From Macrostomum lignano (lineage: Eukaryota): a stretch of DNA of 64,000 nt. This document shows positions 15,175 through 57,400 of the stretch, piece by piece. Position numbers and translations under genes: made by a program. Location: positions 1 to 64,000 of the forward strand of contig NIVC01000303.1 of the NCBI GenBank assembly GCA_002269645.1. Direction: 5' to 3'. Each line of letters starts with the position of its first letter. The stretch's first letter is position 1. The notes under the pieces are model-generated. The model saw only the letters and a program-made list of their open reading frames with translations, ran no database searches and was not told the origin of the DNA.

Positions 15175-15247
15175 TTGGCTTCTTTCTTCTTTGAGCTGCA
15201 ATTTGACGTTGTCGAGGGGATGGGGTTGCGTCAAAATGATGTTACAT

Positions 15248-18761: not shown

Positions 18762-19574
<813 letters not shown>

Positions 19575-19974
19575 CGCGTCCTGATGCACTCAGTTGATAT
19601 CCCCAGAAGCCAGAAGTCCCAAATATTTACCGCATTTAATGCCGGGCAGCCGCCATTTCCATCATCAAAGTGGCATCAAATTTCCGCAGCAGCGTTGGCT
19701 ATGCTGGTTTTTCTTCCACGGTTTCTGTTGAGCCCACACTGTAGTGGCCATAAAACAGCCAGCGGATGCTCATATTTCATACGGCGTTTGAAATTGAAAT
19801 TACACAAAATTATTATAGACCTGCGATGCTCAAATTTTAGAGAGTACGAGCTAGAAAGCGAGTAAAAAGTAGAGAAAATCGCAATGAGATTTTTTTATCC
19901 ATCATAAGGCAAAAAGTTAATGAATCTTAGTGATGCAGTTAGAAATTTGGTTCATAAGATAAGAGATAGTAGAG

Positions 19975-20762: not shown

Positions 20763-21239
20763 GCAGAAATAGTTAAGGCCTCGACGTGACAGGCGTGCTG
20801 GCAGCATCAAATCCATAATTGATAATCGACATGCAGAGGTCTCACATCGTCCTTCCCAATGCACAGCAGCATCAGCAGCAGCAGCTGTAACAATCGCCTT
20901 GCCCGCCAATCTCCGCACTCAGTGACTGACCAACCCAAAATTATTTTATTTTCTAATAGCTAAACCCACAGATACTATATAGTATCTGTGGCTAAACCAT
21001 GCTGACAATCTAATCTGCTAAAAGTATGTACCTCCTTGTCGTCTGGCTGTCTGCCTCTCTGTCTACATGCGCTGGCATCCGTGCGTGTGTCAGACTGCTA
21101 GAGGTTGTTGAATGACCTACTTATAGGTAGGTATGCACAGGTATATTAGATTTGCACTAACTGGTTAACCTAATTATCTGAATATGTTTGACACGTGTTA
21201 ATTTCAATGCCAATTAAAATATCTGGGGCCACTTTCAAA

Positions 21240-22163
<924 letters not shown>

Positions 22164-22617
22164 TTCCACAAGATTTTCCACAAGATGGATCCGTGACCCT
22201 AAACTGAAACGTAACCTCCGTAATCCAATTTCGTCAGTGAGCTTTTTCAGCATAAACATTGGCGTACGCAGAAACTGGGAGCTTAAAAATGAACCAAGCT
22301 TGAAGGTTTGCAACACACAGCGAGAGCTGCTGCTTCACAGCGAGAGCTGCTTGTCCCCTAAAGCAACTGATGTTTTATTCATTGATCAAGCGAGTTTTGA
22401 GTCCATCAATACCTGCTCAGAGCAACTTGAGCTCTCATCGCTCGTACAAGCTACGGAAAATGATTTAGGAATATTTTTTGAAAGTTGGACAACGAGGTGC
22501 ACAGAGTGCGCATCGACACCCAGCAGCTGGTCGCCTCCTTCCCGACTCAGCGTTCCGGCTACCAACAGCTGGGCAGTGATGACACATGACTTGGGAGACA
22601 CTGCTGAGAGAGTGCCA

Positions 22618-22865
22618 GGTCAAAGCCACGTCATAGCTAGGTCATAGCCGGGTCATAGCCAAGTCATAGCGACGTCATATCAAGGACATAGCCGGGTCAT
22701 AGTTAGGTCATAGCCGGGTCATAGTTAGGTCATAGCCGGGTCATAGCCAGATCAAAGCGAAAGTCATAGCCAGGTCATAGCTAGGTCATAGCCAGGTCAT
22801 AGCTAGGTCAAAGCCAAAGTCATAGCCAGTTCATAGCTAGGTCATAGCCAGGTCATAGTCAGGTC
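22618..22865. repeat. Short GGTCATAGCC-type 10/20-bp minisatellite
   Basis: Repeated GGTCATAGCC(A)/GGTCATAGCT units. Confidence 0.85.
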
Positions 22866-33100: not shown

Positions 33101-34045
33101 CACAGATGGGTGTCCGAGAAAACACAGATGGGTGTCCGAGAAAACACAGATGGGTGTCCGTGAAAACACAGATGGGTGTCCGAGAAAACACAGATGGGTG
33201 TCCGAGAAAACACAGATGGGTGTCCGAGAAAACACAGATGGGTGTCCGAGAAAACACAGATGGGTGTCCGAGAAAACACAGATGGGTGTCCGAGAAAACA
33301 CAGATGGGTGTCCGAGAAAACACAGATGGGTGTCCGAGAAAACACAGATGGGTGTCCGAGAAAACACAGATGGGTGTCAGAAAAACCTGTGGGGTGTCAG
33401 AGAAAACAGTGGAGTGTCAATGCAGTGAAGTCAGACACTGCAGCCTTTTTTATCATAGCACAGATATTATCTAAGCTAATTTTGTGGCATCTGAATGACA
33501 CGCAAACTAACAAAACTAATTGATAAAATAAAATGCTAATAGAATAAATGACCAGCGAGTAGAAAAGTCATTTTAGCCGATTAGATCGCGCAACCAACAA
33601 TCTTAATTGAACCAATTAAATTTGCCATGGTCATAAATTGAGGCTAATTATTTTTCGGCTACTTCAATCAGAAAGCAATAAAACAAATTGCTTAGTACTG
33701 CGTCTGGTTATTCATTTATACTCGTAATTTGTTATTATTGCAGATCATTACCAACAGACTGTACTTTATAGAAGGATATATAATGAGACGACTTTAAAAA
33801 TCCTCGCGAACACAATGAAAAGATACTGATGCTGCTATAGGCGCTAAAATAGGGATGTCATGTAGGCGCCAAAATGAGGATGTCATGCTGGCGCCAAATA
33901 GGGATTTTATGGTGGCGCCGCCAAAATGGGGATGTCATGTTGGCTAGTACTAGTAAAATACTAGTGTCAACATTGGCGCCAAAATTCAACGAGGCATTTA
34001 AGCAACTTACTGACTATAATTTCGTTTATTACGCGCGGACGACAT
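24123..34045 (-). CDS. Whirlin/harmonin-family scaffold: N-terminal harmonin-homology domain (HHD), long low-complexity linker, one C-terminal PDZ; about 694 aa; exons 34045-34011, 32310-32058, 31504-31163, 30940-30439, 30063-29758, 26484-26015, 24299-24123
   Basis: HHD LRKVAHQVLTSEECQTF...LLDSPKKFNLLREI. PDZ split over two exons: RRVTLLKDASASSFGFSVRL...VVASVVTGSAASDE|GIQPGDQLLELEGEPVANMTLHQLALAVKSRHRIRLSLL. Mini-exon MSSARNKRNYS-CA|GTAAGT matches the phase-2 HHD acceptor. All phases are compatible (2,0,0,1,1,0) and the CDS totals 2085 nt. The 31504 acceptor and 30439 donor are tentative. Confidence 0.8.
24330..25885. repeat. 23-bp minisatellite (GGGATCAGGGAATGAGGATTATT) filling the last intron of the whirlin-like gene
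   Basis: Direct tandem periodicity, about 1.55 kb. Confidence 0.97.
26665..26840. repeat. 25-bp minisatellite (TACTACTGACAGGTGACACACAATA)
   Basis: About 7 units, period 25 (26719 to 26744). Confidence 0.9.
27325..28275. repeat. 20-bp AG-rich minisatellite (GAGACAGAGAGAAGAGAGGG)
   Basis: Direct periodicity; source of the 300-380 aa ORFs at 27220-28378. Confidence 0.97.
28858..29730. repeat. 21-24-bp minisatellite (GCCATGAGGTGTCTTCTGGGGAA)
   Basis: Direct periodicity with variable G-run length. Confidence 0.95.
31660..31995. repeat. 44-bp minisatellite (GGGTCATGGATGAGTTGTGGGTCATAGACAGGTCATGCTGTTTA)
   Basis: Period 44 (31691 to 31735), built from GGTCAT sub-repeats. Confidence 0.92.
32425..33405. 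repeat. 22-bp minisatellite (GAAAACACAGATGGGTGTCCGA)
   Basis: Period 22, about 44 copies; source of the FSRTPICVF ORFs. Confidence 0.98.
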
Positions 34046-34370
34046 TTCGAAGAAATTCCTAAAAAAGTCTCTAAAAAGTCTGCTTCTAAAAAACAAGGAC
34101 AGAAACTGCAGAGGCCAGTGGCTGGCCAAATGTTGCAGTGCAAACGATGATGCAGGGCCAGTTGCACTGCTTTGGAGCGCTGATATTTTTGCAGGCGGAT
34201 TTCTCTCTCTCTCTCTCTCTCTCTTCCTTCCTTCCGTTGTTCCCTTTCCCCATCGCTCCTGTATCACGGAAATGGGCCAATGGCGTGGCGGCCCAAGCCG
34301 CTGCTCCTCTCTCAGTCTATCTACGTTTCCTCTCTTCTGGATCCTCTCTCAGTCTTCTTCCCCTTAGTGG

Positions 34371-40043: not shown

Positions 40044-42585
40044 ATGGCCGCAATAGAGCCAGTGGCCAGTAATGCTGTCAAGTCTGACGGCGTCGACAGC
40101 ATCGAGACACTCGCCTCGGCAGCTGTCGACGATGTCAACCGTCGCCGTCAAGAAGCCCAGCGTCGTCAAGCGGAAGCAGATTTCCTTGGCGGCTCGCTGC
40201 GCGACTCCGAACGACTTCGAGCTCTGACTGTGAATTCCGGAGCGATCGGACGAGACAATCCGGCGTTCTCTAGCGAAAGAGGTACCGAGTTCGATTCTCC
40301 TCGCGAGCGTAACAGCTACATTGGCGACGCTGTGGATGACCTTGAGGAGGACGATGTTGGCGATATTGGCGACTTTCTTAGACAGCTCCGCAGCGAAGAT
40401 CCCGAAGGTTATTATGACGATGACGAGGGCAGCAGAGGGGACAGACTGGTACCCGACTGGCTGGCCCAGTTCCTCACATCGCCGCGATTCTCAGCGATCT
40501 ACGGCCTGGCTAGACGAGTATCCGACGCGGTGAACGCGGCCGTGTTTGGCGACCAGGACGCTTTTCGTGGCGGCAACGCGTTGACTTGCACGGAGGCGGT
40601 GTCGTCAACTGTCTTGCCTGGTGACGACCGCGAACGAATAGAGCTGCTTCGTCTGTTGAATGAGCCGCATCTGGTTGCGCTGATGAAGGTGCACGATGGA
40701 GCTGCGGCTCGCGCTGTGCCGTTGGAGGACCATCTGCCTGGCGTAGTTAGTGAAAGAGATTTTAGTTCTGTAATCTGAGTAGCTTGTAGCGTGCTTGGGA
40801 AGGCCTGTTGTATAGACTTTCTAGGGGAAATCGCACTTAAATTGATCTGGTCCTTCTCCTTGCCTCCTCTCCATTTCTCTTCTCATCCTCTCACCACTCT
40901 TCTCATTCCTTTCCTCTCTTCTCTGTCCCCTCTCCCCTCTCCCCCTGTCCCCTCTCCCCTCTCCCCTCTCCCCTTCACTCTCCCCTGTCTCCTCTCCTCT
41001 CCCCTCCACTCTCCCTCTCCCCTTCACCCTCCCCCTTCCCTCTCCCTTACCTCTTTCCTCTCTCTACTCCACCCTCTGCTTTCTCCTCCCCTCTCTCCCT
41101 CTCTCTTCTTCCTCTCCTCTCCTGACAGGATATCGAGCCACTTAATGTTCGCTATTACACATGTCTTGCTTTCTGACTTCCCCTCTGAGAAATATCCCCC
41201 CTCCAACCCTAAGCAGGAGGCCCCCAACGAGGCGGAGGCAGCAATCAAGACCAATAACTCGACATCATCATCGCCTCAAGTCTCAGATTCGCCGTCGAAT
41301 TCACCTGACGCATCTCAACGCCGCACTAATAAGCCCAAAGCTCTCGATATCGAGCTGGAAGAGTTCCAACCAAACAACCGTCTGGCAACTTCGTCACTGC
41401 TAGCTGCAGCAAATATTCACGTGACCGTGACTGCCCCAACCCCAAGTCCTTCGGCGTCGCCCTCTGCTAGATCGGCAGCTTCAACAAGCGACGATAATAG
41501 CGCCGAGGTGCAGTCTCCTCCGGTGCCTAGGGAATCGTTGGATTGTCGAACTGAAACCGTAGTGCAAGATGGTGTACAGTTTCGCAGGGTGACGCTTGTT
41601 AAGTCTGATTCTCCTCTGGTGCGATCGATTGTTATTTGTTAGGATTGTCAAAGTTTTTTTTCAGAGATCTTTAGGTTCTTGTCAGATATCTTCAGGTTGT
41701 TCTTGTCAGATATCTTAAGCTTTTGTCAGAGATCTCCAGCTTCTTGTCAGATATCTTCAGCTTTTGTCAGAGATCTCCAGCTTCTTGTCAGATATCTTCA
41801 GGTTATTCTTGTCAGATATCTTCAGCTTTTGTCAGAGATCTTCAGGTTCTTGTCAGAGATCGTCAGGTTTTTCTTGTCAGATATCTTCAGCTTTTGTCAG
41901 AGATCTCCAGCTTCTTGTCAGATATCTTCAGCTTTTGTCAGAGATCTTCAGGTTCTTGTCAAAGATCGTCAGGTTTTTCTTGTCAGATATCTTCAGGTTC
42001 TTGTCAGATCTGACTTTCAGGTTCTTATCAGAGATCTTCAGGTTGTTCTTGTCAGATATCTTCAGATTTTTGTCAGCGACAAAAGGTTGTTCTTGTCAGA
42101 GAGCTTCAGTTTCTTGTCGGATCTTCAGATTATTGTCAGCGATCTTGATGTTGTTGTCAGAGGTTGCTTTTTGTCAGATATCCTCAGGTTATACTGGTTA
42201 TTGTAAATGATCTTCAATAACCTTAAGGTTATTCTTTAGGAATCTCCTTGATTCTGGTCTGAAATCTCATATTTTCTTGTCAGAAAACTCATTTCATCTA
42301 GTCAAATATCCTTTAGTATAGTTTTTTTGTAGCCAAATGCCTGGCATAGATCGACTTTAATGTTTAAACCGATTCATCCAGGGCGCCACAGTGAAAAATG
42401 TTGGCGACTCGGTCGTAGTCAGTCGCATTGTCTGCGGCGGCCTGCTCGACAGAATCGGCGACCTCATTGGCGAGGGCGACGAGCTGATCTCGGTGAATGG
42501 CATCGACCTGACTGGGAAGCACGTTAACGAGGTGTACGACCTGCTGGTGAGCCGCTGCTCGCTTCTCCAGGGTGGAAGGATGGGC

Positions 42586-42616
<31 letters not shown>

Positions 42617-42619
42617 AAT

Positions 42620-42676
<57 letters not shown>

Positions 42677-42679
42677 AAT

Positions 42680-42718
<39 letters not shown>

Positions 42719-42737
42719 GGCAGACAGACAGACAGAC

Positions 42738-42776
<39 letters not shown>

Positions 42777-42779
42777 AAT

Positions 42780-42822
<43 letters not shown>

Positions 42823-42855
42823 GGCAGACACAGACAGATTGACAGACAGACAGAC

Positions 42856-42910
<55 letters not shown>

Positions 42911-42921
42911 GGCAGGCAGAC

Positions 42922-42990
<69 letters not shown>

Positions 42991-42997
42991 CACACAC

Positions 42998-43044
<47 letters not shown>

Positions 43045-45821
43045 CACACACAGACAGACAGACAGACACACAGACAGACACTTAGGCACTAAGACGGACA
43101 GGCACTCACAGACAGGACAGTCGGTGACGCGGACAGCAAAACAGACAGCCACACAAACCCACGCTGCTCCCGCTCAATCGTCTACCCCCCCCCCCAAAAA
43201 AAACGTTATTTGCAGCAAAGTCTCTCTGGACGGTTGGTTTTTCTAACAGTGCCCTGCACAGAGTATCGACCTACAGAGCGAAACAACAACAGCAGTAGCA
43301 GCAACAACAACAATAACAATGTAGAATCCTCAACCGTACTTCGCGCTCTTTTCACTTACGAGCCGTCTGAGGATCTGTATAATCCCTGTCGCGAAGCAGG
43401 ATTAGAATTTCAAGTTGGCGATTTAATCCGAGTGCTCAACACTAAAGATCCGAACTGGTGGCAGGGAGTGAAGGAGATGGAGGCGGCAACTGGGCTCAGA
43501 CCTGTGAGTTGGAATTGGTTTAGTACAACAATCCCACTTAAAAATCCCGGACCCCAATCTTAGCGAGAATTCCTGATCCCAATTCCAGCGAGGATCCCCG
43601 ATCCCAATCCCAGCAAGAATCCCTGATCCCAATCCCAGCAAAAATCCCTGATCCCAATCCCAGCAAGAATCCCTGATCCCAATCCCAGCAAGAATCCCTG
43701 ATCCCAATCCCAGCAAGAATCCATGATTCCAATCCCAGCAAGAATCCCTGATCCCAATTCCAGCAAGGATCCCTCATCCCAATCCCAGAAAGAATCCCTG
43801 ATCCCAATCCCAGCAAGAATCCCTGATCCCAAGCCCAGAAAGAATCCCTGATCTCAATCTTTTTCGAGGATCCCTGACCCCAATCCCAGACAAATCCAAA
43901 ATCCCTGATCCCAATCTCAGCCTAATCCAGAATCTTTGATCCAAATCCCAGCAAGGATCCCTCATCCCAATCTCAGCCAAATCCAGAATCCCTTATCTCA
44001 GCCCAAATGCATACTGATATGGAGTTAATAAACAGTTTAATTACAGACTGTCAGAATCAGAATGTTTACCCTCTTGCGTGTAATTCTTGGCCACATGAAC
44101 GCATAGGATAGCAAAGCCGAACCCCGTGTACCCACTTGCAGAGCAAGGCCAATGCTTAAAAGCTTTGAAAGTAACCCAAACTCCACTCTGTTTGCATTGC
44201 TAATTAGTTTTCTTATTATATTAAACAGGCACCCCAAAGTCTTACTAACAGATTGCATTACAGTCAAGTTTAATGTTAATTAACTCAACATTACGCTTGT
44301 ACATTGTGTTACCCGATGATACAAAAAACATGTGCTTTTAGTCTTCAATGACTAAATCTTGGTATTTTGAATGACTCAAAGCGACCTGAAATGAGCTAAA
44401 TGATCTAAAGTGATCCTGAATGTCCCAAAATAATCCAGAATGACCCGAAATGATTCCCAATGACTCAAGATGATCATAAACTACTCAGAGTGATCTTGAA
44501 TGACTCAACAGGATCCCAGATGACTCAAAATTATTCTGAATGACTTATAATGGTTCCGAATGACTCGTAATGGTCCCGAATGACTAGTAATGGTCCCGAA
44601 TGACTCGTAATGGTCCCGAATGACTCGTAATGGTCCCGAATGACTCGTAATAGTCTTGAATGACTCAAAGTCATGCCGAATGACTCAAAATTATCCCGAA
44701 TGACTCGTAATAGTCTCGAATGACTCAAAATCATCCCGAATGACTCGTAATAGTCTCGAATGACTCAAAATCATGCCGAATGACTCAAAATGATTCCAAA
44801 ATGACCAAACATAATCTCGAACGAGTCTTAAAATGATCGCAAGCCGCTCAAATGACCAAAAAAGATCCCGAATGACCCAAAGCAGCGGCAGGAGTCGGCC
44901 AGAAGCCTGGCCGGCTTATTTCCGTCGCCGGATTTTCAACGCCGACGCCAGCTGATGCTGTCGATGGCCGCGGCCAACGCAGCCGAGGCGACAGCGGATG
45001 CCAGCTCGAGCAGCTGCTGCTGGCGCTGTCAAAGATGCTTGCCATTGAAACGATTCGGCATCCGAGCTGGACGTCGTCGTCAAGATAACCGGTACGCGCC
45101 CGCCGACTTATCCGCTGGATCGTCGGGCTCGTCGTCGACGTCTGGAGAGTCCGACACGGAGGCTGACGTCGTCATTGATGACGGAGGCGGTCGTAATGGC
45201 GGTTAGTGTGGGTCCTGTGTTTCTTTAAATTAGAACTAAAGAGGTGGCGAGGCATTTGCTACTATAAACGAACTTTTAGTTACTCTGGCCGTTTACCCAG
45301 TTAGTCTAATAATCAATTCGCAGGCAACAGTCGAAAGCGGCATCGCGTCGGATCGTTGCGTCGTCAAAAACGGCGGCACAGAAGAAGATTTTTTGAGCCG
45401 CAGGCGCTGCTGCAACCGCAGCCGTTCCGGCGACGGCCACTCGTACTGGTTGGACCTCCCGGAGTTGGGCGACACGAACTGCGGGTTCGTCTGATCGAGT
45501 CCGACCCGGCCAGGTTCGCTCCTGCTCTGCTGCACACCACACGGCAGCGGCGCCAGGATGAGACTGACGGCGTCGACTTTGAGTTCACTACTAGACAGGT
45601 TAGTTAGTTAGTTAGTTAGTTTGTTTGTTTGTTTGTTTGTTTGTTTGTTTGTTTGTTTGTTTCTTAGTTAGGCAGTCAGTTAGTTAGTTAGTCAGTTAGT
45701 TAGTCAGTTAGTTAGTCAGTTAGTTCGTTAGTTAGTTAGTTAGTTAGTTAGTCAGTTAGTTAGTCAGTTAGTTAGTTAGTTAGTCAGTTAGTTAGTTAGT
45801 TAGTCAGTTAGTTAGTTAGTC

Positions 45822-45876
<55 letters not shown>

Positions 45877-45877
45877 C

Positions 45878-45916
<39 letters not shown>

Positions 45917-45961
45917 CAGTTAGTTAGTTAGTAAGTTAGTTAGTCAGTTAGTTAGTTAGTC

Positions 45962-46008
<47 letters not shown>

Positions 46009-46037
46009 AAGTTAGTTAGTCAGTTAGTTAGTTAGTC

Positions 46038-46088
<51 letters not shown>

Positions 46089-46169
46089 CAGTTAGTTAGT
46101 TAGTTAGTCAGTCAGTTAGTTAGTTAGTTAGTTAGTCAGTTAGTTAGTAAGTTAGTTAGTCAGTTAGTA

Positions 46170-46200
<31 letters not shown>

Positions 46201-46253
46201 CAGTTAGTTAGTTAGTTAGTCAGTTAGTTAGTTAGTCAGTTAGTTAGTTAGTC

Positions 46254-46284
<31 letters not shown>

Positions 46285-48057
46285 CAGTTAGTTAGTTAGT
46301 CAGTTAGTTAGTTAGTTAGTCAGTTAGTCAGTTAGTTAGTTAGTCAGTTAGTTAGTTAGTCAGTTAGTCAGTTAGTTTGTTTGTTTGTTGGTTACTTAGC
46401 CAGCTCTCCCTGCCACTCCGCAGGAGTTTCAGCGCCGCATTCGGGAAGGCGGCCACTTCCTGGAGACTGGCCAGTTCAACGGCGATCTGTACGGCACCAG
46501 CGTGGCGAATGTGACCAGCGTGGTGGAGTCCGGCTCGGTGTGCGTGCTCACCATGCAGCCGGCCGGTCTCAGGGCCATTCGGCGACACCCGGCAAGGTTG
46601 ATGCCCTACTCAGTTTTTGTCAGTCCGCCGCCAAGTTTAAATGGACTGCGCGCTCTGCGACGAAAATTGTCCCCCAGTGGCGCCGAAGTGGCGCCTGAGG
46701 ATAGCGTGAGTGAATGTTCTATTACCGATTGGAAGCTGAAACTAGGGTCTGGAGTCTCACGGTGAGATTCTAAGGTGTGGTATCCCAGGGTGAGATTCTA
46801 AGGTGTGGTATCTCATGGTGAGATTCTAAGGTGTAGCGTCTCAGGGTGAAATTCTAAGGTTTGGTATCTCAGGGTGAGATTCTAAGGTTTGTTATCTCAG
46901 GGTGAGATTCTAAGGTGTGGTATCTCATGGTGAGATTCTAAGGTGTGGTATCTCAGGGTGAGATTCTAAGGTGTGGTATCTCAGGGTGAGATTCTAAGGT
47001 GTGGTATCTCAGGATGAGATTCTAAGGTGTAGCGTCTCAGGGTGAAATTCTAAGGTGTAGCGTCTCAGGGTGAAATTCTAAGGTTTGGTATCTCAGGGTG
47101 AGATTCTAAGGTTTGTTATCTCAGGGTGAGATTCTAAGGTGTGGTATCTCAGGGTGAGATTCTAAGGTGTGGTATCTCAGGGTGAGATTCTAAGGTGTGG
47201 TATCTCAGGGTGAGATTCTAAGGTGTAGCGTCTCAGGGTGAAATTCTAAGGTTTGGTATCTCAGGGTGAGACTCTAAGGTTTGTTATCTCAGGGTGAGAT
47301 TCTAAGGTGTGGTATCTCATGGTGAGATTCTAAGGTGTAGCGTCTCAGGGTGAAATTCTAAGGTTTGGTATCTCAGGGTGAGATTCTAAGGTTTGTTATC
47401 TCAGGGTGAGATTCTAAGGTGTGGTATCTCATGGTGAGATTCTAAGGTGTAGCGTCTCAGGGTGAAATTCTAAGGTTTGGTATCTCAGGGTGAGATTCTA
47501 AGGTGTGGTATCTCAGGGTGAGATTCTAAGGTGTGGTATCTCAGGGTGAGATTCTAAGGTGTGGTATCTCAGGGTGAGATTCTAAGGTGTGGTATCTCAG
47601 GGTGAGATTCTAAGGTGTGGTATCTCAGGGTGAGATTCAAAGGTGTGGTATTTAAAGGTAAGATTTTGGTGTCTCGTGAATTTTCTTGTACATGTATGTG
47701 AGACTTCATATTTGTTGAGAATTCCTATAGCTGAGTAAATGTGAAATTTGCAGTAATTAGAGGTGAGCTTTCAGACTTAGCAGGTGTTTTCCAAAAAAAG
47801 TCAACTTTTTTTTATCTTTCAAGGACGCCGATTTGCGCAAACTGATCGACCTGAGCCGCCGCATGGAAGAGGCCTGCGGTCATCTGGTCGACCGAGTGTT
47901 GGTCAACACCGATTTGAGCGCCTCGGTTGCCCAACTGGTTGGCATGGTAACCCGTCTTGAACGGGAGCCGCAGTGGGTGCCAGCGTCTTGGCTGCAGCCT
48001 CCGGCGGGTGCCGCTGCTCGATTGGCTGGTAGCGAGATTGCTGACACAGCCTGCTGA
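40044..48057 (+). CDS. MPP5: MAGUK p55 subfamily member 5 (PALS1/Stardust): L27N-L27C-PDZ-SH3-HOOK-GUK, about 884 aa; exons 40044-40742(or 40745), 41217-41618, 42382-42546, 43216-43503, 44892(approx)-45201, 45324-45598, 46424-46705, 47824-48057
   Basis: N-terminal RRRQE...SERLRAL...GRDNPAF resembles PALS1 GIDNPxF. L27 [39 protein letters not shown]...GDELISVNG...[11 protein letters not shown]3 [27 protein letters not shown]...DPNWWQ...[19 protein letters not shown]...HTTR...LYGTS...[10 protein letters not shown]. Intron phases are compatible. Confidence 0.93.
40850..41125. repeat. CT-rich low-complexity tract (MPP5 intron 1)
   Basis: Polypyrimidine CCTCT/CCCCT repeats. Confidence 0.85.
41650..42200. 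repeat. 20+21-bp dimeric minisatellite (TTTTGTCAGAGATCTCCAGC TTCTTGTCAGATATCTTCAGC), MPP5 intron 2
   Basis: Period 41 (41721 to 41762). Confidence 0.9.
42585..43080. repeat. (CAGA)n microsatellite, MPP5 intron 3
   Basis: Directly visible. Confidence 0.97.
43560..44005. repeat. 25-bp minisatellite (CCCTGATCCCAATCCCAGCAAGAAT), MPP5 intron 4
   Basis: Period 25 (43621, 43646, 43671). Confidence 0.93.
44365..44880. repeat. 20-bp minisatellite (GAATGACTCGTAATGGTCCC), MPP5 intron 4
   Basis: Period 20, with degenerate flanks. Confidence 0.9.
45599..46380. repeat. (TTAG)n/(TCAG) microsatellite making up almost all of MPP5 intron 6
   Basis: Starts at the GTTAGT donor (45599) and ends about 45 nt before the acceptor (46423). 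Confidence 0.98.
46760..47650. repeat. 28-bp minisatellite (GGGTGAGATTCTAAGGTGTGGTATCTCA), MPP5 intron 7
   Basis: Period 28; each unit has an internal inverted repeat TGAGAT...ATCTCA. Confidence 0.97.
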
Positions 48058-48104: not shown

Positions 48105-48585
48105 CTAGGCCCTGCTGCCATAGATCTAGACCCTGATGCTATAGATCTAGACACCGATTATTGAGATCTAGACACAACGATTATTGAGATCTCGACATCG
48201 ATTATTGAGATCTAGACATCGATTATTGAGATCTAGACATCGATTATTCAGATCTAGGCACCGATTATTGAGATCTAGTCACCGATTATTGAGATCTAGA
48301 CACCGATTATTGAGATCTAGACACCGATTATTGAGATCTAGTCACCGATTATTGAGATCTAGACACCGATTATTGAGATCTAGACACCGATTATTGAGAT
48401 CTAGACACCGATTATTGAGATCTAGACACAACGATTTTTGAGATCTAGTCATTGATTATTGAGATGTAGACACCGATTATTGAGATCTAGACACAACGAT
48501 TTTTGAGATCTAGTCATTGATTATTGAGATGTAGACACCGATTATTGAGATGTAGACACCGATTATTGAGATCTAAACACCGATA
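48105..48585. repeat. 21-bp minisatellite (TTATTGAGATCTAGACACCGA) just 3' of the MPP5 stop
   Basis: Period 21 (48181, 48202, 48223). Confidence 0.95.
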
Positions 48586-50414: not shown

Positions 50415-50955
50415 CGGTGATTCTCAGTCTGGTTTATCGGTGATTCTCAGTCTGGTTTATCGGTGATTCTCAGTCTGGTTTATCAGCGATTCTCAGTCTG
50501 GTTTATCAGCGATTCTCAGTCTGGTTTATCGGTGATTGTCAGTCTGGTTTATCAGCGATTCTCAGTCTGGTTTATCGGTGATTGTCAGTCTGGTTTATCA
50601 GCGATTCTCAGTCTGGTTTATCAGCGATTCTCAGTCTGGTTTATCGGTGATTGTCAGTCTGGTTTATCAGCGATTCTCAGTCTGGTTTATCAGCGATTCT
50701 CAGTCTGGTTTATCGGTGATTGTCAGTCTGGTTTATCAGCGATTCTCAGTCTGGTTTATCAGCGATTCTCAGTCTGGTTTATCGGTGATTCTCAGTCTGG
50801 TTTATCGGTGATTGTCAGTCTGGTTTATCAGCGATTCTCAGTCTGGTTTATCAGCGATTCTCAGTCTGGTTTATCGGTGATTGTCAGTCTGGTTTATCAG
50901 CGATTCTCAGTCTGGTTTATCAGCGATTCTCAGTCTGGTTTATCGGTGATTGTTA
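50415..50955. repeat. 23-bp minisatellite (GATTCTCAGTCTGGTTTATCGGT)
   Basis: Period 23 (50419 to 50442); source of the ORFs at 50463-50969. Confidence 0.97.
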
Positions 50956-52091
50956 ATGCTGCTATTTAGGAAGATTTATTCGAATTCGATGTAGGAGCGA
51001 ACACACAGCAATCTATATATTTTTCAGAGTAAAAAGCGTTTGCAAAACACTTCAGGGTAGTCATAGAGTGCAAATGCAAACATTCAATTTTATTTTAGTC
51101 TTTGTTCAAGAGCGGCCTTGATAACACAAAGCACCTCAGTTGAAGTCCATTCCACAATTCCTAGTCAGTCAGTGAGTCACTCCGCCAGTCATGTGATGCG
51201 ATGAATTTGCGTTCTTTAATTGTCCAATTCTTTAACGCTTTCACAAAAAACAGATGCTAGGCTTGATTACGAAGATTGGACAAGTAAAGCGCTGAAAACC
51301 AAAAATTCAAGTGCAAAGAGGGCAAACAGAACTTGTTTCGTTTTGCTGTTGAATGCATTTAGAAAATCACGTGCTTTCTTAAATTCTTATGCTAGGGCTT
51401 GCTTGTTCGTCTGCAAATAATCATCTGCATATGGCAGCATAGCATCGCACAGCTGGTGGTGGTTGTCTGTCTGTCCTGGATAGATGGATGGCGGATGATG
51501 CCCGTGCTTGTGCCTGTGCAGGCAGGCTAAGCCATAAAAGGCAGACGAATAGAAAGCAAGAGATTTGGCCTAGAACTGGAACTTTATCAACTACTAAAAG
51601 TTGCGGCCTTGCGGCCGGGGCGGGCGGGCCCAAGGCCACAAGCAAAGCCTCTCCTGCTACTGACTAATGCCCCCCCCGATCTTGTCCTTATTGGGCCAAG
51701 CGGGTGAAGGGACAGGGAGGAAAGGGAAACGGGGTTTATAGGATTATCAGTAAGATCCACGAGATGTGGAGGCCCAAGGCCGAGGAGGGGGTGGGTTTTC
51801 CTTATATTTAAAGTGAATGTACACCATAGAATCGGAATGTACATTCGCCCCTCCCCATAAGTCGAGTGTACAACCGAACAACTCCCCAACTCCCCCCATG
51901 GGCCCCGGAAAACGACGTCATTTTTTCTGATCTAAATGAACCCAAGCCCCCCCCCGCCGCCCCATAAAACCGGCACCCATCCAGTTCTGCCCTCAGCCCT
52001 CACAGCCCCCCTCCCAAATTCACATCAGCGAAGCCAAGCCCCCGTTCTTTTTTGTATCTCCTCTCCTCTCCCCTTACCCCAGGCCCCAGCC

Positions 52092-52099
52092 TATATAAA
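52092..52099 (+). promoter_or_regulatory. TATA box of the secreted cationic peptide gene
   Basis: TATATAAA 126 nt upstream of the ATG at 52225, preceded by a GC/C-rich upstream region with a CRE-like CGACGTCA near 51915. Confidence 0.65.
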
Positions 52100-52224
52100 C
52101 GTAGCAATTTTCCGCGCCTGTAAGAATTTCCTCCCCAAGAATTCTGCTTGCTTGGTTTCTTGGTTGATCCTCTTGACTATCCTAGGACCTCCTCCTACTA
52201 GATCCTATCGTACTAATCCTAACT

Positions 52225-52835
52225 ATGGGCCTGCCAACGGTAGCTCTGGCTCTATGCCTGTTCGCGGCGGCTGTCTATTATCCAGCAGAGGCTATGCCGC
52301 AACCCCCGTCTGCCGATGACAAAGGTCTGGTGCCTGTCGGAGAATCCGGGACCGGAGTGTAAGTTGATCGAGCATTACTTATGTATGCATTTTGAGTATT
52401 ATTAGCATTACAAGTTTATTTTTTATTTGTACATATTGTCTACTTTTTTGAGTAGTAAAATCAATATTTTTCGCGCAATTTTATAGTCAACGCCAGCAGC
52501 CGGGAGCTGCCAGCGGCGCTGGCGCCGTGGACGCCCAGACTCAGACAGACGGCGCCGCTCAGCAGAGCGACCGTCGGCGCGGTCGCGGCCGCGGCCGCAA
52601 AGGCCGTCGCAATCGCAAGGGCAAGCGTCGCGAAGGCAAGCGCAACCGGTGCCGCACGCCCGAGTGCAAACGAGAGCGCCGATTGCGCCGCAAGCAGCGC
52701 CGGGAGCAGCGCCGGCAGCGCAAGAACGGACGCCGCGGCGGCAGGGGCGGCAGAGGCCGGCGCCGTCGCAAGGATCGCAAGCAGCGGCCGCAGGAGCCGC
52801 AGCTGCCACAGGCTCCCGCTCCGGTGCCTCAATAA
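52225..52835 (+). CDS. Two-exon gene (52225-52358, 52487-52835) for a 160-aa secreted Arg/Lys-rich peptide of unknown family
   Basis: Exon 1 encodes a signal-peptide-like MGLPTVALALCLFAAAVYYPAEA. Consensus donor GT|GTAAGT at 52359 and acceptor TTTTATAG at 52486 are both phase 2 and join in frame (483 nt). AT-rich 128-nt intron between GC-rich exons; upstream TATA box; AATAAA at 52831-52836 overlapping the stop. Confidence 0.8.
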
Positions 52836-54466
52836 ATGTTAATTATCAATTATCATCAGCCTGGACTCAGCACCTGCATTAGTTAATCTATTTTGTACTT
52901 TTATTACAGCTAATTAAACAAACTGGCAAGCAATTTGTATAGTTTATTATTTTAGCCGAATTGCAAATTTCTTAAAATTTGAATTCGCGCCTTAATTCGT
53001 CATTTGACGAGTTAAAACAAAACGAAAGTTAATTTCCGGCTTTTCAAAAATTAATTTTCCACTTCATAATCGTTTAACCTACTATATAAGTAGCACAGTT
53101 AGCGCACATTCTTACAATAGCTTTTGTCCGAATGCGTTGCATTCTTGCTTTCTGACTGGTTTGATTTTTTTTCTTATAATAAGGCATTCTTTCATAACAG
53201 CCCTAGCCCCTCCTTTAATTAATATAAAATTATTGCATAGTATAAAAATTAAAATAGCGATTGCTTTACCGCAAACCCGACCTGTTTTCTATATTAAATA
53301 TACTGATTCAAAATTTAAAAAATAAATAAGTCGTTTGTTTTAAAATAATGCGATTCTTGAGCAATATTATTTTCTTTGGGAGCCACTTCGCCCGCTTCAC
53401 TAAAGCACACAAATGAATTATATAATAATTTGCATAATTATTAATCAAGCTTTTATTGATTTATTATTAAATATTTGTCTTTTTTCCAATTCATTTTTCT
53501 TTACACCAACAGACCATTGAACATTGTTTTCAATTGCGGTTTGTTAAAAGCAAGAAACAAACTAACAAAGTAAATTAACACATACGAAGCAAACCGAGAA
53601 CACTTGAATGCTCCATTGATTGAACAAACACAATGAACACGAGCGAGAGTAGTATATAGTTAAGTATTAGTAGTATAATGACGAGCCGTTTTCTTGTTGG
53701 CGGAGAATTAAAACTTGAAAAAAAACTTGATTTGTTATACAATACAAATCGGAACGCAAAGGTCGCTTAGGAGAGCTGAAATATCGCGGATGAGACACTG
53801 GTTGGAGAGAATCTCAATATTTGACGATTGGCTCGAATCAAGTTCTCTGTATCCGGGTTTGCCAGACTTTAATAATTAAGTAGTATTTTAGGATTTTTAT
53901 ACCTATTTAAACAATGCACAGAAATTCAACTGTAAACTACTTATTCAATGAGTAGTAGTAGAGGATATTAAAAGTAGCCATTTAGTCACAAATTTCACCA
54001 AAATAATCTGGCAAACCCGGGTTACACACAGCTGAGAGAACAATCAAAAGTGCGCCAATGCAGTTCGATCTTTATTACTTTAATTTTATAGTAGTAACAG
54101 TGGTATCCGCACTTGTTTGCAAAAGTTATTGTTTCGGAACAGAAAATGCTAATGTAATATTTTCTTTAAAGTTTGCAACGTACTTCGCTTGTTTTTGCTT
54201 GAGGAAAAACAGTCAAAGAGATGGAACAAAAATATTATAATATAAATTATACGAAGGGGAAATGAAGAAGAGTATCTGTTTCACCCAATAAATACTGAAT
54301 ATTTGAACTTCTACACTGCAAAGGTGTCAAGCGATCATGATGGTGACAGACGGATGAACGAACAAAAAACACACGCCTAACAAGTACGACTGGGGCAGAC
54401 ACACTGTTGAATAGGATTTCTGAGCTTTGCCTTAAATCACTGAACTAGCCCCAATACATCAAGGAG

Positions 54467-57400
54467 TCATCTTGCCAGACGCCTTCTGGCTTGGATTCGA
54501 CTACGGTTCGGCCGATTTGACGCCGGTACCGACTGGGCGTTGAACGGGTTGCCGGCACTGCAATTTTGCGAGAGTATGAATGAGAACAGTCATAAACTAC
54601 TTACAGATCAGTCATAACTCTACTCCCCAGTCATTGGTCATAAAGCTGCTCATACAACAGTCATAAAGATACCCACAAAACAGTCACAAAGCTACTCATA
54701 CAACAGCCATAAAGCTACTCATACAACAGCCATAAAGCTACTCATACAACAGCCATAAAGCTACTCATACAACAGCCATAAAGCTACTCATACAACAGCC
54801 ATAAAGCTACTCATACAACAGTCATAAAGCTACCCACAAAACAGTCATCAAGCTACTCATACAACAGCCATAAAGCTACTCATACAACAGTCATAAAGAT
54901 ACCCACAAAACAGTCACAAAGCTACTCATACAACAGCCATAAAGCTACTCATACAACAGCCATAAAGCTACCCACAAAACAGTCATCAAGCTATTCATAC
55001 AACAGCCATAAAGCTACCCACAAAACAGTCATCAAGCTACTCATACAACAGTCATAAAGATACCCACAAAACAGTCATCAAGCTACTCATACAACAGTCA
55101 TAAAGATACCCACAAAACAGTCATCAAGCTACTCATACAACAGCCATAAAGCTACTCATACAACAGCCATAAAGCTACCCACAAAACAGTCATCAAGCTA
55201 CTCATACAACAGTCATAGAGATACCCACAAAACAGTCATCAAGCTACTCATACAACAGCCATAAAGCTACTCATACAACAGCCATAAAGCTACTCATACA
55301 ACAGTCATAAAGCTACCCACAAAACAGTCATCAAGCTACTCATACAACAGCCATAAAGCTACTCATACAACAGTCATAAAGATACCCACAAAACAGTCAC
55401 AAAGCTACTCATACAACAGCCATAAAGCTACTCATACAACAGCCATAAAGCTACCCACAAAACAGTCATCAAGCTATTCATACAACAGCCATAAAGCTAC
55501 CCACAAAACAGTCATCAAGCTACTCATACAACAGTCATAAAGATACCCACAAAACAGTCATCAAGCTACTCATACAACAGTCATAAAGATACCCACAAAA
55601 CAGTCATCAAGCTACTCATACAACAGCCATAAAGCTACTCATACAATGATACAACAGCCATAAAGCTACCCACAAAACAGCCATAAAGCTACTCATACAA
55701 CAGCCATAAAGCTACTCATACAACAGCCATAAAGCTACCCACAAAACAGTCATCAAGCTACTCATACAACAGTCATAAAGATACCCACAAAACAGTCACA
55801 AAGCTACTCATACAACAGCCATAAAGCTACTCATACAACAGTCATAAAGATACCCACAAAACAGTCACAAAGCTACTCATACAACAGCCATAAAGCTACT
55901 CATACAACAGCCATAAAGCTACTCATACAACAGTCATCAAGCTACTCATACAACAGTCATAAAGCTACCCACAAAACAGTCATCAAGCTACTCATACAAC
56001 AGCCATAAAGCTACTCATACAACAGTCATAAAGATACCCACAAAACAGTCACAAAGCTACTCATACAACAGCCATAAAGCTACTCATACAACAGCCATAA
56101 AGCTACCCACAAAACAGTCATCAAGCTATTCATACAACAGCCATAAAGCTACCCACAAAACAGTCATCAAGCTACTCATACAACAGTCATAAAGATACCC
56201 ACAAAACAGTCATCAAGCTACTCATACAACAGTCATAAAGATACCCACAAAACAGTCATCAAGCTACTCATACAACAGCCATAAAGCTACTCATACAACA
56301 GCCATAAAGCTACTCATACAACAGCCATAAAGCTACCCACAAAACAGTCATCAAGCTACTCATACAACAGTCATAAAGATACCCACAAAACAGTCACAAA
56401 GCTACTCATACAACAGCCATAAAGCTACTCATACAACAGTCATAAAGATACCCACAAAACAGTCACAAAGCTACTCATACAACAGCCATAAAGCTACTCA
56501 TACAACAGCCATAAAGCTACCCACAAAACAGTCATCAAGCTACTCATACAACAGTCATAAAGCTACCCACAAAACAGTCATCAAGCTACTCATACAACAG
56601 TCATAAAGATACCCACAAAACAGTCATCAAGCTACTCATACAACAGTCATAAAGCTGCTCACAGAACAGTCATGAATCTACCCACAAAACAGTCATAAAG
56701 CTACCCACAGAGCTGTCATAAAGCTACTCATACAACAGTCATAAAGCTAATCACAGGATAGCCATCGGTCATAAAAGCTACTCCAACTAAGCGACATGAG
56801 CACTCACGCATCCGGTGGCAAATTTGCTGGCTGCCCAGCATGCAACAATTGCTGCGACGGTTGCTGCTGCTGCTGCGTGGCTGCAGGTCTGGAGGCGCCA
56901 AACACAAAAGTTGAAGCCGCGCCGCTTGGCGGATTGGCGCCGAAAACAAAAGTTGACGACGCCGCACTCGGTTTGGGCTCGGCATCCAAATCGACAACAG
57001 GCTGGGGAGCCTGAGCTGGCGCCAGTTTAGAGCCGAATAGCCCAGGCGGTGGTGCGGCGGCGCCTGGCGCACTATTGGCACCATTGGCGCCTCCAAACAG
57101 ACTGGCGCCATTTGACCCGCCCCCAGCGCCAAAGTTAAAAGCTGGCGCCGTCAGCTGCGATGGCGCCGAAGAGTCGGACAATTTTGATAGCTTATTGCTG
57201 GGCTGATCTGGCGCCGGCGCCGCTGGCGCGGAGGCGCCAAAAGCGAACGGAGCTGCAGTGGTAGCAGCGGCGGTGGCGGCTGGTCCCGCGCTAAAATTGA
57301 AGTTCATCGAAGGCTTAATCGATGTCGTTGTTGTTGAACTGTCCAGATTTAATTTCCGCTTTGAATCTCTCGACGACGCCGGGGTAGCGGCGGAGGCGGC

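What the first reader, a model, noticed from the sequence alone, without database searches (positions are those of the whole stretch)
52092..52836. Hidden two-exon gene for a secreted polycationic peptide (net charge about +38 over 72 residues)
Seen in sequence: TATA box, ATG with a hydrophobic signal-like N-terminus ending in AEA, a consensus GTAAGT...TTTTATAG intron, and a second exon in frame. Spliced product: signal + neutral Gly/Ala/Gln pro-segment + a 72-aa core with 34 Arg, 9 Lys, 5 acidic residues and one Leu + a Pro/Gln tail. The core alternates RG-rich coils around a central CRTPEC Cys pair followed by a helix-like KRERRLRRKQRREQRRQRK. The ORF track shows only the signal-less second half, so automated annotation may miss or truncate it. 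Established knowledge: protamine-like Arg-rich proteins are normally nuclear and have no signal peptide, and classical antimicrobial peptides are amphipathic, whereas this core has almost no hydrophobic face. Inference: an extracellular polycation, such as an antimicrobial or cell-penetrating peptide, an adhesive/mucus/gland component or a seminal-fluid factor, possibly processed at its many RxxR/KR sites. I recognise no family for it.
Basis: partly seen in the sequence, partly recalled or inferred. Interest (0 to 1): 0.85.

Follow-up and report, generated by a model that had tools for sequence, protein, structure and literature searches.

The report
Annotated flatworm gene, secreted polycationic protein
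The two-exon gene is real and encodes a small, extremely arginine-rich protein with a signal-peptide-like start, but it is not hidden: it lies in the flatworm Macrostomum lignano, whose GenBank record already annotates it from RNA data, and its function is still untested.

Summary
The window is Macrostomum lignano contig NIVC01000303.1, bases 1-64000 (assembly GCA_002269645.1). They are ATG 52225, a GTAAGT...TTTTATAG intron at 52359-52486, an in-frame exon 2 ending at TAA 52833-35, and a 160-aa product with a +36 core. The gene is not hidden. The GenBank annotation, built only from RNA-seq and transcriptome assemblies plus TransDecoder, already calls a 160-aa product at exactly 52225..52835. 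A second genomic copy on NIVC01002420.1 is annotated as 163 aa. The two copies differ by 8 synonymous and 6 non-synonymous changes (dN/dS 0.27), with none non-synonymous in the cationic core. Their coding indels are 3 and 12 nt, both in frame. No Pfam family and no PDB relative was found. The large protein libraries turned out not to hold even the two annotated copies, so their silence says little. I read the product as a lineage-restricted secreted polycation that acts by charge-based binding of polyanions. The nearest precedent is in the same species: the GRK-rich regions of the adhesive protein Mlig-ap1. Tissue and function remain untested. Interest is moderate to low.

The parts
52091..52098 (+). 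TATA-like box TATATAAA, 127 nt upstream of the ATG
   Evidence: Read in the sequence. It is identical in the homeologous copy L003. Its function as a promoter element is inferred, not shown.
52225..52358 (+). Exon 1 coding part (134 nt, residues 1-44 plus 2 nt of codon 45); residues 1-23 form the signal-peptide-like segment MGLPTVALALCLFAAAVYYPAEA
   Evidence: The start coincides with the start of the GenBank gene. The homeolog is identical over residues 1-20, and A21T keeps a small residue at -3.
52294..52296 (+). Second in-frame ATG (Met24), immediately after the predicted cleavage site AEA|M
   Evidence: Its use as an alternative start, which would give a signal-less 137-aa form, is speculation.
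52359..52486 (+). Intron, 128 nt, GTAAGT...TTTTATAG, 25% GC
   Evidence: The homeolog has a 129-nt intron with the same splice sites. An alternative GT-AG pair at 52325-52452 gives the same product length.
52487..52835 (+). Exon 2 coding part including stop TAA 52833-35
   Evidence: The end coincides with the end of the GenBank gene.
52569..52784 (+). Polycationic core, residues 73-144 (33 R, 9 K, 6 D/E, net +36)
   Evidence: Between the homeologs there are 0 non-synonymous and 4 synonymous differences, plus an in-frame 12-nt insertion (+QRRQ).
52650..52667 (+). CRTPEC, the only two cysteines of the mature part
   Evidence: The peptide is conserved in the homeolog with two synonymous changes. 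A disulfide is inferred only.
52659..52733 (+). Predicted Arg-rich alpha-helix PECKRERRLRRKQRREQRRQRKNGR (residues 103-127)
   Evidence: AlphaFold2 single-sequence model, helix at pLDDT 89-95.
52785..52832 (+). Pro/Gln-rich C-terminal tail QRPQEPQLPQAPAPVPQ (residues 144-160; the segment mapped starts at residue 145)
   Evidence: There are two non-synonymous differences in the homeolog.
52831..52836 (+). AATAAA polyadenylation-signal-like hexamer overlapping the stop codon
   Evidence: Read in the sequence and conserved in L003. Its use is not shown here.

Best explanation
This is a genuine, transcribed and already annotated gene of Macrostomum lignano (NIVC01000303.1:52225-52835, + strand, two coding exons). 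It has at least one more genomic copy.

It encodes a 160-aa precursor with four parts:
- a cleavable signal peptide (residues 1-23);
- a weakly acidic Gly/Ala/Gln-rich disordered segment (net -4);
- a 72-residue Arg/Gly/Lys core of net charge +36, in which RG-rich coils flank a Cys-x4-Cys turn and a long Arg-rich helix;
- a Pro/Gln tail.

Shown: gene structure, transcription-derived annotation, frame conservation and composition.

Inferred: the product enters the secretory pathway and acts outside the cell or inside secretory granules purely through charge. It would bind and condense polyanions such as acidic or sulfated glycoconjugates, nucleic acids or microbial surfaces. My preferred role is a component of a gland secretion, where it cross-links or packages polyanionic glycans. 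This is the same physical principle that the GRK-rich regions of Mlig-ap1 use for cohesion in this animal's temporary adhesive. Which gland (adhesive, prostate, cement, rhabdite or mucus) is unknown.

The confidence given (0.4) is for the whole chain, including the charge-based gland-secretion role. For 'real expressed protein-coding gene' alone I would put about 0.9, and for 'enters the secretory pathway' about 0.7.
For: Organism and annotation:
- A MAGUK query hit M. lignano PAA85794.1 at 100% identity.
- Locus L001 is identical to window 30044-58057, and a 160-residue gene is called at exactly the finding's ATG and stop.
- That annotation was built only from RNA-seq (StringTie/TACO), a de novo transcriptome and TransDecoder (PMC5730564).

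Second copy:
- It is annotated as 163 aa on NIVC01002420.1.
- It has the same splice sites, the same TATA box and the same AATAAA.
- Coding indels are 3 and 12 nt, while the intron indel is 1 nt.
- There are 8 synonymous and 6 non-synonymous changes, dN/dS 0.27, one-sided P 0.015. The core has 0 non-synonymous and 4 synonymous changes.
- The two long antisense ORFs fit the substitutions badly, at 2 synonymous and 7 non-synonymous each.

Signal-like N-terminus: a 17-residue hydrophobic stretch, A-x-A before Met24, and no other hydrophobic segment.

Helix.

Precedent for secreted polycations surviving the secretory pathway in this species: the Mlig-ap1 KR regions (over 3,600 aa, pI above 14) are found in footprints, heparin blocks attachment, and cationic peptides block release (PMC6410801).
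Against: - No expression site, no secretion test and no SignalP run were available.
- No peptide of the protein was found in the text-held mass-spectrometry supplements of the adhesion paper or in the supplements of the seminal-fluid screen. This is a weak negative.
- The core carries 21 dibasic and 15 R-x-x-R positions, so convertases could shred it.
- The two homeologs are about 97% identical in non-coding DNA too, so the evidence for selection rests on only 14 substitutions.
- An antisense frame that shares the wobble positions fits the substitutions equally well. It is open for only 73 aa and runs against the intron's orientation.
- No ortholog outside M. lignano could be examined.
Confidence: 0.4

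Rival explanations
1. Host-defence polycation. After removal of the signal and the mildly anionic pro-segment, the disordered cationic core is released onto the body surface or into the gut. It kills microbes by binding their envelope and condensing nucleic acids.
For: The architecture of signal, then anionic or neutral pro-piece, then cationic C-terminal part is the usual one for cationic defence-peptide precursors (established knowledge). Non-amphipathic, disorder-rich cationic peptides are microbicidal largely independent of sequence (PMC6399351). The composition is +36 with almost no hydrophobic residues.
Against: There are no expression or infection-response data. The pro-piece (-4) cannot neutralise +36. 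The animal lives in sea water, where high ionic strength weakens purely electrostatic killing (inference). No related peptide is known in flatworms (one search found none for Macrostomum).
Confidence: 0.2
2. Prohormone-like precursor. The basic stretches are not the product but dense convertase cleavage sites. Processing would release the roughly 49-residue N-terminal peptide, a possible disulfide-cyclised CRTPEC hexapeptide, and the C-terminal QRPQEPQLPQAPAPVPQ (possibly with N-terminal pyroglutamate).
For: A signal-like N-terminus is followed by 21 dibasic positions. CRTPEC is flanked by KRNR and KR, and the tail is preceded by RK.
Against: There are far more basic residues than any cleavage function needs. 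The core shows no amino-acid change between copies, whereas the would-be peptides (pro-segment and tail) carry all 6 non-synonymous changes. That is the opposite of what is expected if those were the active parts. There is no repeated peptide unit and no clear amidation signal. A confident helix runs through the 'spacer'.
Confidence: 0.1
3. Seminal-fluid or other reproductive secretion protein (prostate or cement gland), transferred to the partner or the egg. It would act there by binding sperm, egg-shell or partner tissue polyanions.
For: M. lignano has at least 76 prostate-limited transcripts, most predicted to be secreted and lacking annotation (PMC5977470). Reproduction-related genes in the genus evolve fast and are hard to find across species (PMC7336406). 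That would fit the lack of any recognisable family.
Against: No sequence fragment of the protein occurs in the text-held supplements of the seminal-fluid screen. The homeolog comparison shows constraint, not rapid change. The library silence is uninformative, because even the annotated copies are missing from it.
Confidence: 0.15
4. Not secreted. The protein, or an isoform starting at Met24, is an intracellular nucleic-acid-binding protein: a sperm nuclear basic (protamine-like) protein or a nucleolar RGG/Arg-rich-motif protein. The hydrophobic N-terminus would be unused or would serve as a membrane anchor.
For: The composition resembles protamines, GAR/RGG boxes and Arg-rich RNA-binding helices. 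A second in-frame ATG lies exactly after the predicted cleavage site. A pyrimidine tract plus AG (about 52270-52288) lies between the two ATGs and could serve as a spliced-leader acceptor in this trans-splicing species (PMC5730564).
Against: The annotated CDS starts at ATG 52225, which has the stronger context (A at -3, G at +4). The signal-like segment is conserved in the second copy. There is no Pfam match to protamine or histone-like families.
Confidence: 0.1
5. Transcribed but not translated. The ORF would be a by-product of a GC-rich, slippage-prone low-complexity stretch picked up by TransDecoder.
For: Exon 2 contains short codon-multiple repeats. Several frames on both strands are open there. 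The window is full of minisatellites that give long meaningless ORFs.
Against: The combination of ATG, signal-like segment, consensus intron and in-frame exon is kept in two copies. Indels are frame-preserving and dN/dS is 0.27. The region is not a tandem array.
Confidence: 0.05

Closest known systems
GRK-rich (Lys/Arg-rich) regions of the Macrostomum lignano adhesive protein Mlig-ap1 (Wunderer et al. 2019, PMC6410801; PMC8621496)
   Same: Same species. Both are secreted and have an extreme positive charge built from Gly/Arg/Lys low-complexity sequence (the antigen peptide SRKPRRKNRKSRKP compares with GRKGRRNRKGKRREGKRNR here). Function through electrostatic binding to anionic glycans has been demonstrated for Mlig-ap1.
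   Different: Mlig-ap1 is a 5,000+ aa multidomain protein with lectin, vWD, EGF and other domains, while this protein is 160 aa with no domain. Homology was not tested because the Mlig-ap1 sequence was not at hand. Expression in adhesive glands is not known, and no peptides were seen in the footprint supplements.
[quoted passage not shown]
   Same: A high net positive charge, mostly disorder-promoting residues and few hydrophobic ones. The precursor has a signal and a non-cationic pro-segment.
   Different: CIDAMPs described so far are fragments of intracellular or cornified-envelope proteins of mammals. Here there are no activity data. The charge density (+36 over 72 residues) is far higher, and the pro-piece does not balance it.
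Protamines and sperm nuclear basic proteins
   Same: Arg content near 46% in the core, short length and cysteines present.
   Different: Protamines have no signal peptide and act in the nucleus. There is no Pfam or PDB sequence match. The helix and RGG-type coils are not protamine-like.
Arginine-rich-motif RNA-binding helices (e.g. HIV-1 Rev/Tat type) and RGG/GAR boxes
   Same: The predicted helix RRLRRKQRREQRRQRK and the flanking GRGRGR/GRRGGRGGRG stretches have the same composition and predicted conformation.
   Different: Those act inside cells, whereas this protein starts with a signal-like segment. The resemblance is compositional only.
Polybasic cement proteins of marine bioadhesives (sandcastle-worm Pc proteins, mussel foot proteins). 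This comparison rests on my own knowledge, not on a tool result.
   Same: Small secreted polycations that pair with polyanions and form complex coacervates in a marine animal.
   Different: Those are Lys/Gly/Tyr(DOPA)-rich. This one is Arg-rich with only two Tyr, both in the signal peptide. There is no sequence relation.

Membership tests
Protamine / sperm nuclear basic proteins | Sequence match to a protamine or SNBP family model | tested here: not met
   Pfam scan at E<=10 gave no family. PDB sequence search gave only a chance hit at E 8.8.
Protamine / sperm nuclear basic proteins | No signal peptide; nuclear protein of spermatids | tested here: not met
   The N-terminus has a 17-residue hydrophobic core and an A-x-A motif, and it is conserved in the second copy. 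Localisation itself is not testable here.
Classical amphipathic cationic antimicrobial peptide precursor | Signal peptide, then anionic pro-piece, then cationic mature part | tested here: inconclusive
   The order of segments is present. The pro-piece is only -4 against +36. SignalP is not available.
Classical amphipathic cationic antimicrobial peptide precursor | Amphipathic mature peptide with a hydrophobic face | tested here: not met
   The core has one Leu and no other large hydrophobic residue. The predicted helix is uniformly charged or polar.
Cationic intrinsically disordered antimicrobial peptides (CIDAMP) | Linear, cationic, rich in disorder-promoting and poor in order-promoting residues | tested here: met
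   Composition R 33, G 12, K 9, E/D 6, Q 3, N 3 of 72. About one third is predicted helical.
Cationic intrinsically disordered antimicrobial peptides (CIDAMP) | Microbicidal activity | not testable with these tools
   Needs a synthetic peptide and killing assays.
Flatworm temporary-adhesion proteins (Mlig-ap1-like) | Secreted Gly/Arg/Lys-rich polycationic region | tested here: met
   Composition against the description in PMC6410801 and PMC8621496. This is similarity of composition only.
Flatworm temporary-adhesion proteins (Mlig-ap1-like) | Expression in adhesive gland cells and presence in footprints | tested here: inconclusive
   No fragment of the protein occurs in the four text-held supplements of PMC6410801. 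Those files may list only ap1 and ap2 peptides. In situ data are not available.
Flatworm temporary-adhesion proteins (Mlig-ap1-like) | Sequence homology to Mlig-ap1 | not tested
Neuropeptide / prohormone precursors | Signal peptide plus bioactive peptides flanked by mono- or dibasic sites, the peptides being the conserved parts | tested here: not met
   Sites are abundant. However, all 6 amino-acid differences between the copies fall in the would-be peptides and none in the basic core.
Real protein-coding gene (as against a spurious ORF) | Transcript evidence, conserved frame and an excess of synonymous change | tested here: met
   RNA-derived GenBank models exist for both copies. Indels are in frame and dN/dS is 0.27 with P 0.015. 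The sample is small, at 14 substitutions.

The most novel reading that the evidence does not exclude
The protein is a small diffusible polycation of the flatworm's gland secretions that tunes charge-based adhesion. In the duo-gland system it would strengthen cohesion or buffer the still unidentified anionic releasing factor. Exogenous cationic peptides are already known to block detachment in this species. It would be the first small-protein component of temporary adhesion and a natural 'extracellular protamine'.
Probability: 0.12. Interest if true: 0.7.

Novelty: new variant of a known kind. Interest (0 to 1): 0.35.

Why it matters
If the product is secreted intact, it is among the most charge-dense secreted proteins one can point to: +36 over 72 residues with almost no hydrophobic residues. 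It also sits in a model animal where RNAi, in situ hybridisation, transgenesis and adhesion assays are routine, and where charge-based adhesion and release is an open mechanistic question. It would be a compact, easily synthesised test object for polycation-polyanion biology, including coacervation, glycan or nucleic-acid condensation and antimicrobial action. As it stands it is an annotated hypothetical protein without functional data, so the value lies in the lead and nothing has yet been discovered about function.

Tried and rejected
1. A word-indexed protein search with the full product gave no hit at E<=10. The 8000-candidate list was swamped by Arg-rich words.
2. A full HMMER search of 1.84 billion representatives gave only two chance hits, to kringle and HYR repeat proteins. 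A local control showed that a self hit or a 60%-diverged relative would score 100-320 bits. However, exact look-ups showed that neither splice version of the window protein nor of the annotated homeolog is in that collection. The negative result therefore cannot be read as 'no relatives'.
3. I spent one protein search on the Nup153-like ORF to identify the organism. Low-complexity words swamped it and only fish and fungal hits came back. The MAGUK query then identified the organism.
4. My initial guess of a dipteran or Drosophila origin, based on composition and neighbours, was wrong.
6. The older paralogous MAGUK locus (L002, 62% identity) shows no copy of the gene in its ORF list. The third homeologous locus (L004) ends in expanded minisatellites before the expected position.
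7. Rfam and tRNA scans of the window found nothing.
8. Literature full-text search for sequence fragments gave no paper. The supplements of the adhesion and seminal-fluid papers have no fragment. Searches for rhabdite basic proteins and Macrostomum antimicrobial peptides gave nothing specific.
9. The bacterial promoter and terminator scan is irrelevant for a eukaryote.
10. A fold search of the model was not run. A two-helix, low-pTM model (0.35) would give meaningless matches.
Full report
**1. What is in the sequence**

- TATATAAA lies at 52091-52098.
- The ATG is at 52225.
- Exon 1 runs to 52358.
- The intron is 128 nt (52359-52486) and begins GTAAGT and ends TTTTATAG. It is 25% GC, against 61% and 73% for the exons.
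- Exon 2 is in frame and ends at TAA 52833-35, which is overlapped by AATAAA (52831-36).

The product is 160 aa: MGLPTVALALCLFAAAVYYPAEA | MPQPPSADDKGLVPVGESGTGVQRQQPGAASGAGAVDAQTQTDGAAQQS | DRRRGRGRGRKGRRNRKGKRREGKRNRCRTPECKRERRLRRKQRREQRRQRKNGRRGGRGGRGRRRRKDRK | QRPQEPQLPQAPAPVPQ.

The core (residues 73-144) has 33 Arg, 9 Lys and 6 acidic residues, for a net charge of +36. The N-terminus has the form of a signal peptide: hydrophobic windows reach 2.7 on the Kyte-Doolittle scale, Ala sits at -3 and -1, and there is no further hydrophobic segment. No SignalP run was possible.

A single-sequence AlphaFold2 model of the exon-2 ORF gives three elements:
- a confident helix (pLDDT 89-95) over PECKRERRLRRKQRREQRRQRKNGR;
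- a weaker helix over KGRRNRKGKRREGKRN;
- coil elsewhere.

Exon 2 is not a tandem array. It contains only short repeats whose period is a multiple of three (6, 9, 12 and 21 nt).

**2. Where it comes from, and the claim that it is 'hidden'**

The neighbouring genes are:
- a MAGUK with L27, PDZ, SH3 and guanylate-kinase domains (+ strand, 40044-48057);
- a Nup153-like gene (- strand);
- a cadherin gene;
- an ankyrin-repeat gene.

A query assembled from the MAGUK exons hit Macrostomum lignano PAA85794.1 (BOX15_Mlig004762g1) at 100% identity. The contig that encodes it, NIVC01000303.1 of assembly GCA_002269645.1, is identical to the window, and window coordinates equal record coordinates.

In that GenBank record a gene is called at locus positions 22182-22792. 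This equals window 52225-52835, on the + strand, with a product of 160 residues and no Pfam hit. The gene is therefore annotated in full and is not hidden or truncated.

According to the genome paper, the annotation was generated only from experimental transcripts. It used STAR/StringTie/TACO on RNA-seq, a mapped de novo transcriptome, the TBONE boundary pipeline and TransDecoder (PMC5730564). The model is therefore itself evidence for a spliced transcript.

One caveat remains. Two GT-AG introns of 128 nt give an open 160-aa frame: 52359-52486 and 52325-52452. I cannot see which one the record uses. The first has the consensus donor, and it leaves the GC-rich stretch in the exon and the AT-rich stretch in the intron, so I prefer it.

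**3. A second copy and the evidence for coding constraint**

M. lignano DV1 carries large recent duplications (PMC5730564). The 90% cluster of the MAGUK holds two further M. lignano proteins on other contigs.

Around one of them (NIVC01002420.1, locus L003) the same gene order recurs, and a 163-residue gene is annotated at L003 26453-27073. Its sequence has the same TATA box, ATG, GTAAGT donor, TTTTATAG acceptor and AATAAA.

The two copies are about 97% identical everywhere, coding or not, so there is little power. What differences exist point one way:
- The only indels inside the CDS are 3 nt (-Gly) and 12 nt (+QRRQ, one more unit of the 12-nt repeat). The intron differs by 1 nt and the 5' region by 1, 3 and 5 nt.
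- The 14 coding substitutions are 8 synonymous and 6 non-synonymous. This gives pS 0.063, pN 0.017, a ratio of 0.27 and a one-sided binomial P of 0.015.
- In the polycationic core they are 4 synonymous and 0 non-synonymous.
- The two long antisense ORFs fit badly, at 2 synonymous and 7 non-synonymous each.
- One antisense frame that shares wobble positions fits equally well. It is open for only 73 aa and opposes the intron's orientation.
- The signal-like segment is unchanged over residues 1-20, and A21T keeps a small residue at -3.

The third homeologous locus could not be reached, because its flank ends in expanded minisatellites. An older paralogous MAGUK locus has no copy.

**4. Relatives elsewhere**

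- Pfam: none at E<=10.
- PDB sequences: only a chance hit.
- Word-indexed protein search: nothing, because it was swamped.
- Full HMMER search of 1.84 billion representatives: two chance hits.

A local control shows that HMMER would score the protein itself at 322 bits and a 60%-mutated version at 109 bits. However, exact look-ups show that neither the window protein nor the annotated homeolog, in either splice version, is in the collection. The library is blind to at least these two known members, so its silence is weak evidence. I can say only that no family is recognisable. Whether orthologs exist in other Macrostomum species is untested.

**5. What it most likely does**

*Shown:* an expressed, frame-conserved gene whose product has a signal-like N-terminus and a uniquely charge-dense, hydrophobic-poor core with one Cys-x4-Cys motif at the N-cap of an Arg-rich helix.

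*Inferred:* it is translocated into the ER, loses residues 1-23, and works through electrostatics.

The best-documented context is in the same animal. The cohesive adhesive protein Mlig-ap1 contains more than 3,600 residues of Lys/Arg-rich ('GRK-rich') sequence with a pI above 14. It is secreted from adhesive glands and detected in footprints. Heparin or fondaparinux blocks attachment, and free Lys, free Arg or the cationic peptide SRKPRRKNRKSRKP blocks detachment. The releasing factor is proposed to be a small anionic molecule (PMC6410801; PMC8621496).

This shows two things:
- Polybasic sequences full of R-x-x-R survive this animal's secretory pathway.
- Polycation-polyanion pairing is a working mechanism in its secretions.

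I therefore favour a gland-secretion polycation that binds, condenses or cross-links anionic glycoconjugates. The gland is unknown. Against a role in the adhesive itself, no fragment of the protein appears in the text-held footprint mass-spectrometry supplements. That is a weak negative.

**6. Rivals**

- **Defence polycation.** The precursor layout fits. Sea-water ionic strength and the lack of any data argue for caution.
- **Prohormone.** There are 21 dibasic and 15 R-x-x-R positions, and CRTPEC is neatly flanked by basic sites. However, the amino-acid changes between copies fall only in the would-be peptides and never in the 'spacer'.
- **Seminal-fluid or reproductive secretion.** This is plausible given the many unannotated secreted prostate transcripts (PMC5977470) and their fast evolution (PMC7336406). 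There was no match in that paper's supplements.
- **Intracellular nucleic-acid binder.** Met24 lies exactly after the predicted cleavage site, and a pyrimidine tract plus AG (about 52270-52288) between the two ATGs could in principle accept the spliced leader. The annotated CDS and the stronger start context favour ATG 52225.
- **Untranslated ORF.** This is unlikely given section 3.

**7. Novelty and verdict**

The 'hidden gene' framing is wrong, and the functional reading remains a hypothesis. The gene has been in GenBank as a hypothetical protein since the 2017 assembly. I found no paper that mentions its sequence.

In kind, it is a small, domain-free variant of the secreted polycations already known from this species' adhesive and from cationic disordered defence peptides. 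It is not a member of any sequence family I could test.

Interest is moderate to low (0.35). The protein is unusual and easily testable in a tractable model, but nothing here shows a new mechanism.

Noticed in passing
window 1-64000: The window is bases 1-64000 of Macrostomum lignano contig NIVC01000303.1 (Mlig_3_7, GCA_002269645.1). Window coordinates equal record coordinates.
   Followed up: yes
window 52294-52296 and about 52270-52288: A second in-frame ATG (Met24) sits exactly after the predicted signal-peptide cleavage site. A pyrimidine tract ending in AG lies between the two ATGs. In this trans-splicing species that could give a signal-less 137-aa isoform. This is pure speculation.
   Followed up: no
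window 52325-52452: An alternative GT-AG intron of the same length (128 nt) also yields an open 160-aa frame. It replaces GLVPVGESGTGV with VVKSIFFAQFYS. Both possibilities exist in the homeolog as well.
   Followed up: partly
L003 26453-27073 (NIVC01002420.1): This is a homeologous copy annotated as 163 aa. It differs by -Gly, by +QRRQ (one extra 12-nt repeat unit) and by six substitutions. The whole neighbourhood (PDZ gene, MAGUK, this gene, Nup153-like) is duplicated at about 97% identity.
   Followed up: yes
window 54637-56753: A large minisatellite (46/23-nt unit, about 46 copies, strong GC and AT skew) lies inside the annotated range of the Nup153-like gene, whose called range reaches down to 54467, only 1.6 kb from the target's stop.
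   Followed up: partly
window 18737-22100, 27220-29624, 32364-33474, 41679-43832, 48122-48584, 50419-50951: There are many long minisatellite arrays, several inside introns of the MAGUK gene. They produce long, meaningless ORFs in several frames (CLSVCLSV..., ERREGDRE..., etc.). Array lengths differ strongly between homeologous loci; for example the 21-nt array has 22 copies here and 167 in L004.
   Followed up: partly
window 40044-48057 (+): MAGUK p55/MPP5 (Pals1/Stardust-type) gene, GenBank PAA85794.1 BOX15_Mlig004762g1, 887 aa. It has two homeologs at 90% identity or more, and older paralogs at 62% identity arranged in tandem on NIVC01000625.1.
   Followed up: partly
window 30044-34219 (-), 8181-15291 (-), 1304-4234 (+): Other genes in the window are a 752-aa PDZ protein with an RTEL1-type harmonin-homology domain, a multi-cadherin-repeat gene, and an ankyrin-repeat protein followed by hydrophobic, channel-like exons.
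   Followed up: no
window 52225-52835: Arg codons in the gene are 60% CGC, against 20% in neighbouring genes. Gly codons are 67% GGC, against 39%. This is consistent with growth of the core by slippage of CGC/GGC-rich codon repeats, or with expression-linked codon bias.
   Followed up: no
protein libraries (not the window): The 15-billion-protein collection lacks both annotated M. lignano copies of this protein, although their gene positions are indexed. Negative homology results for this protein should therefore not be over-read.
   Followed up: yes
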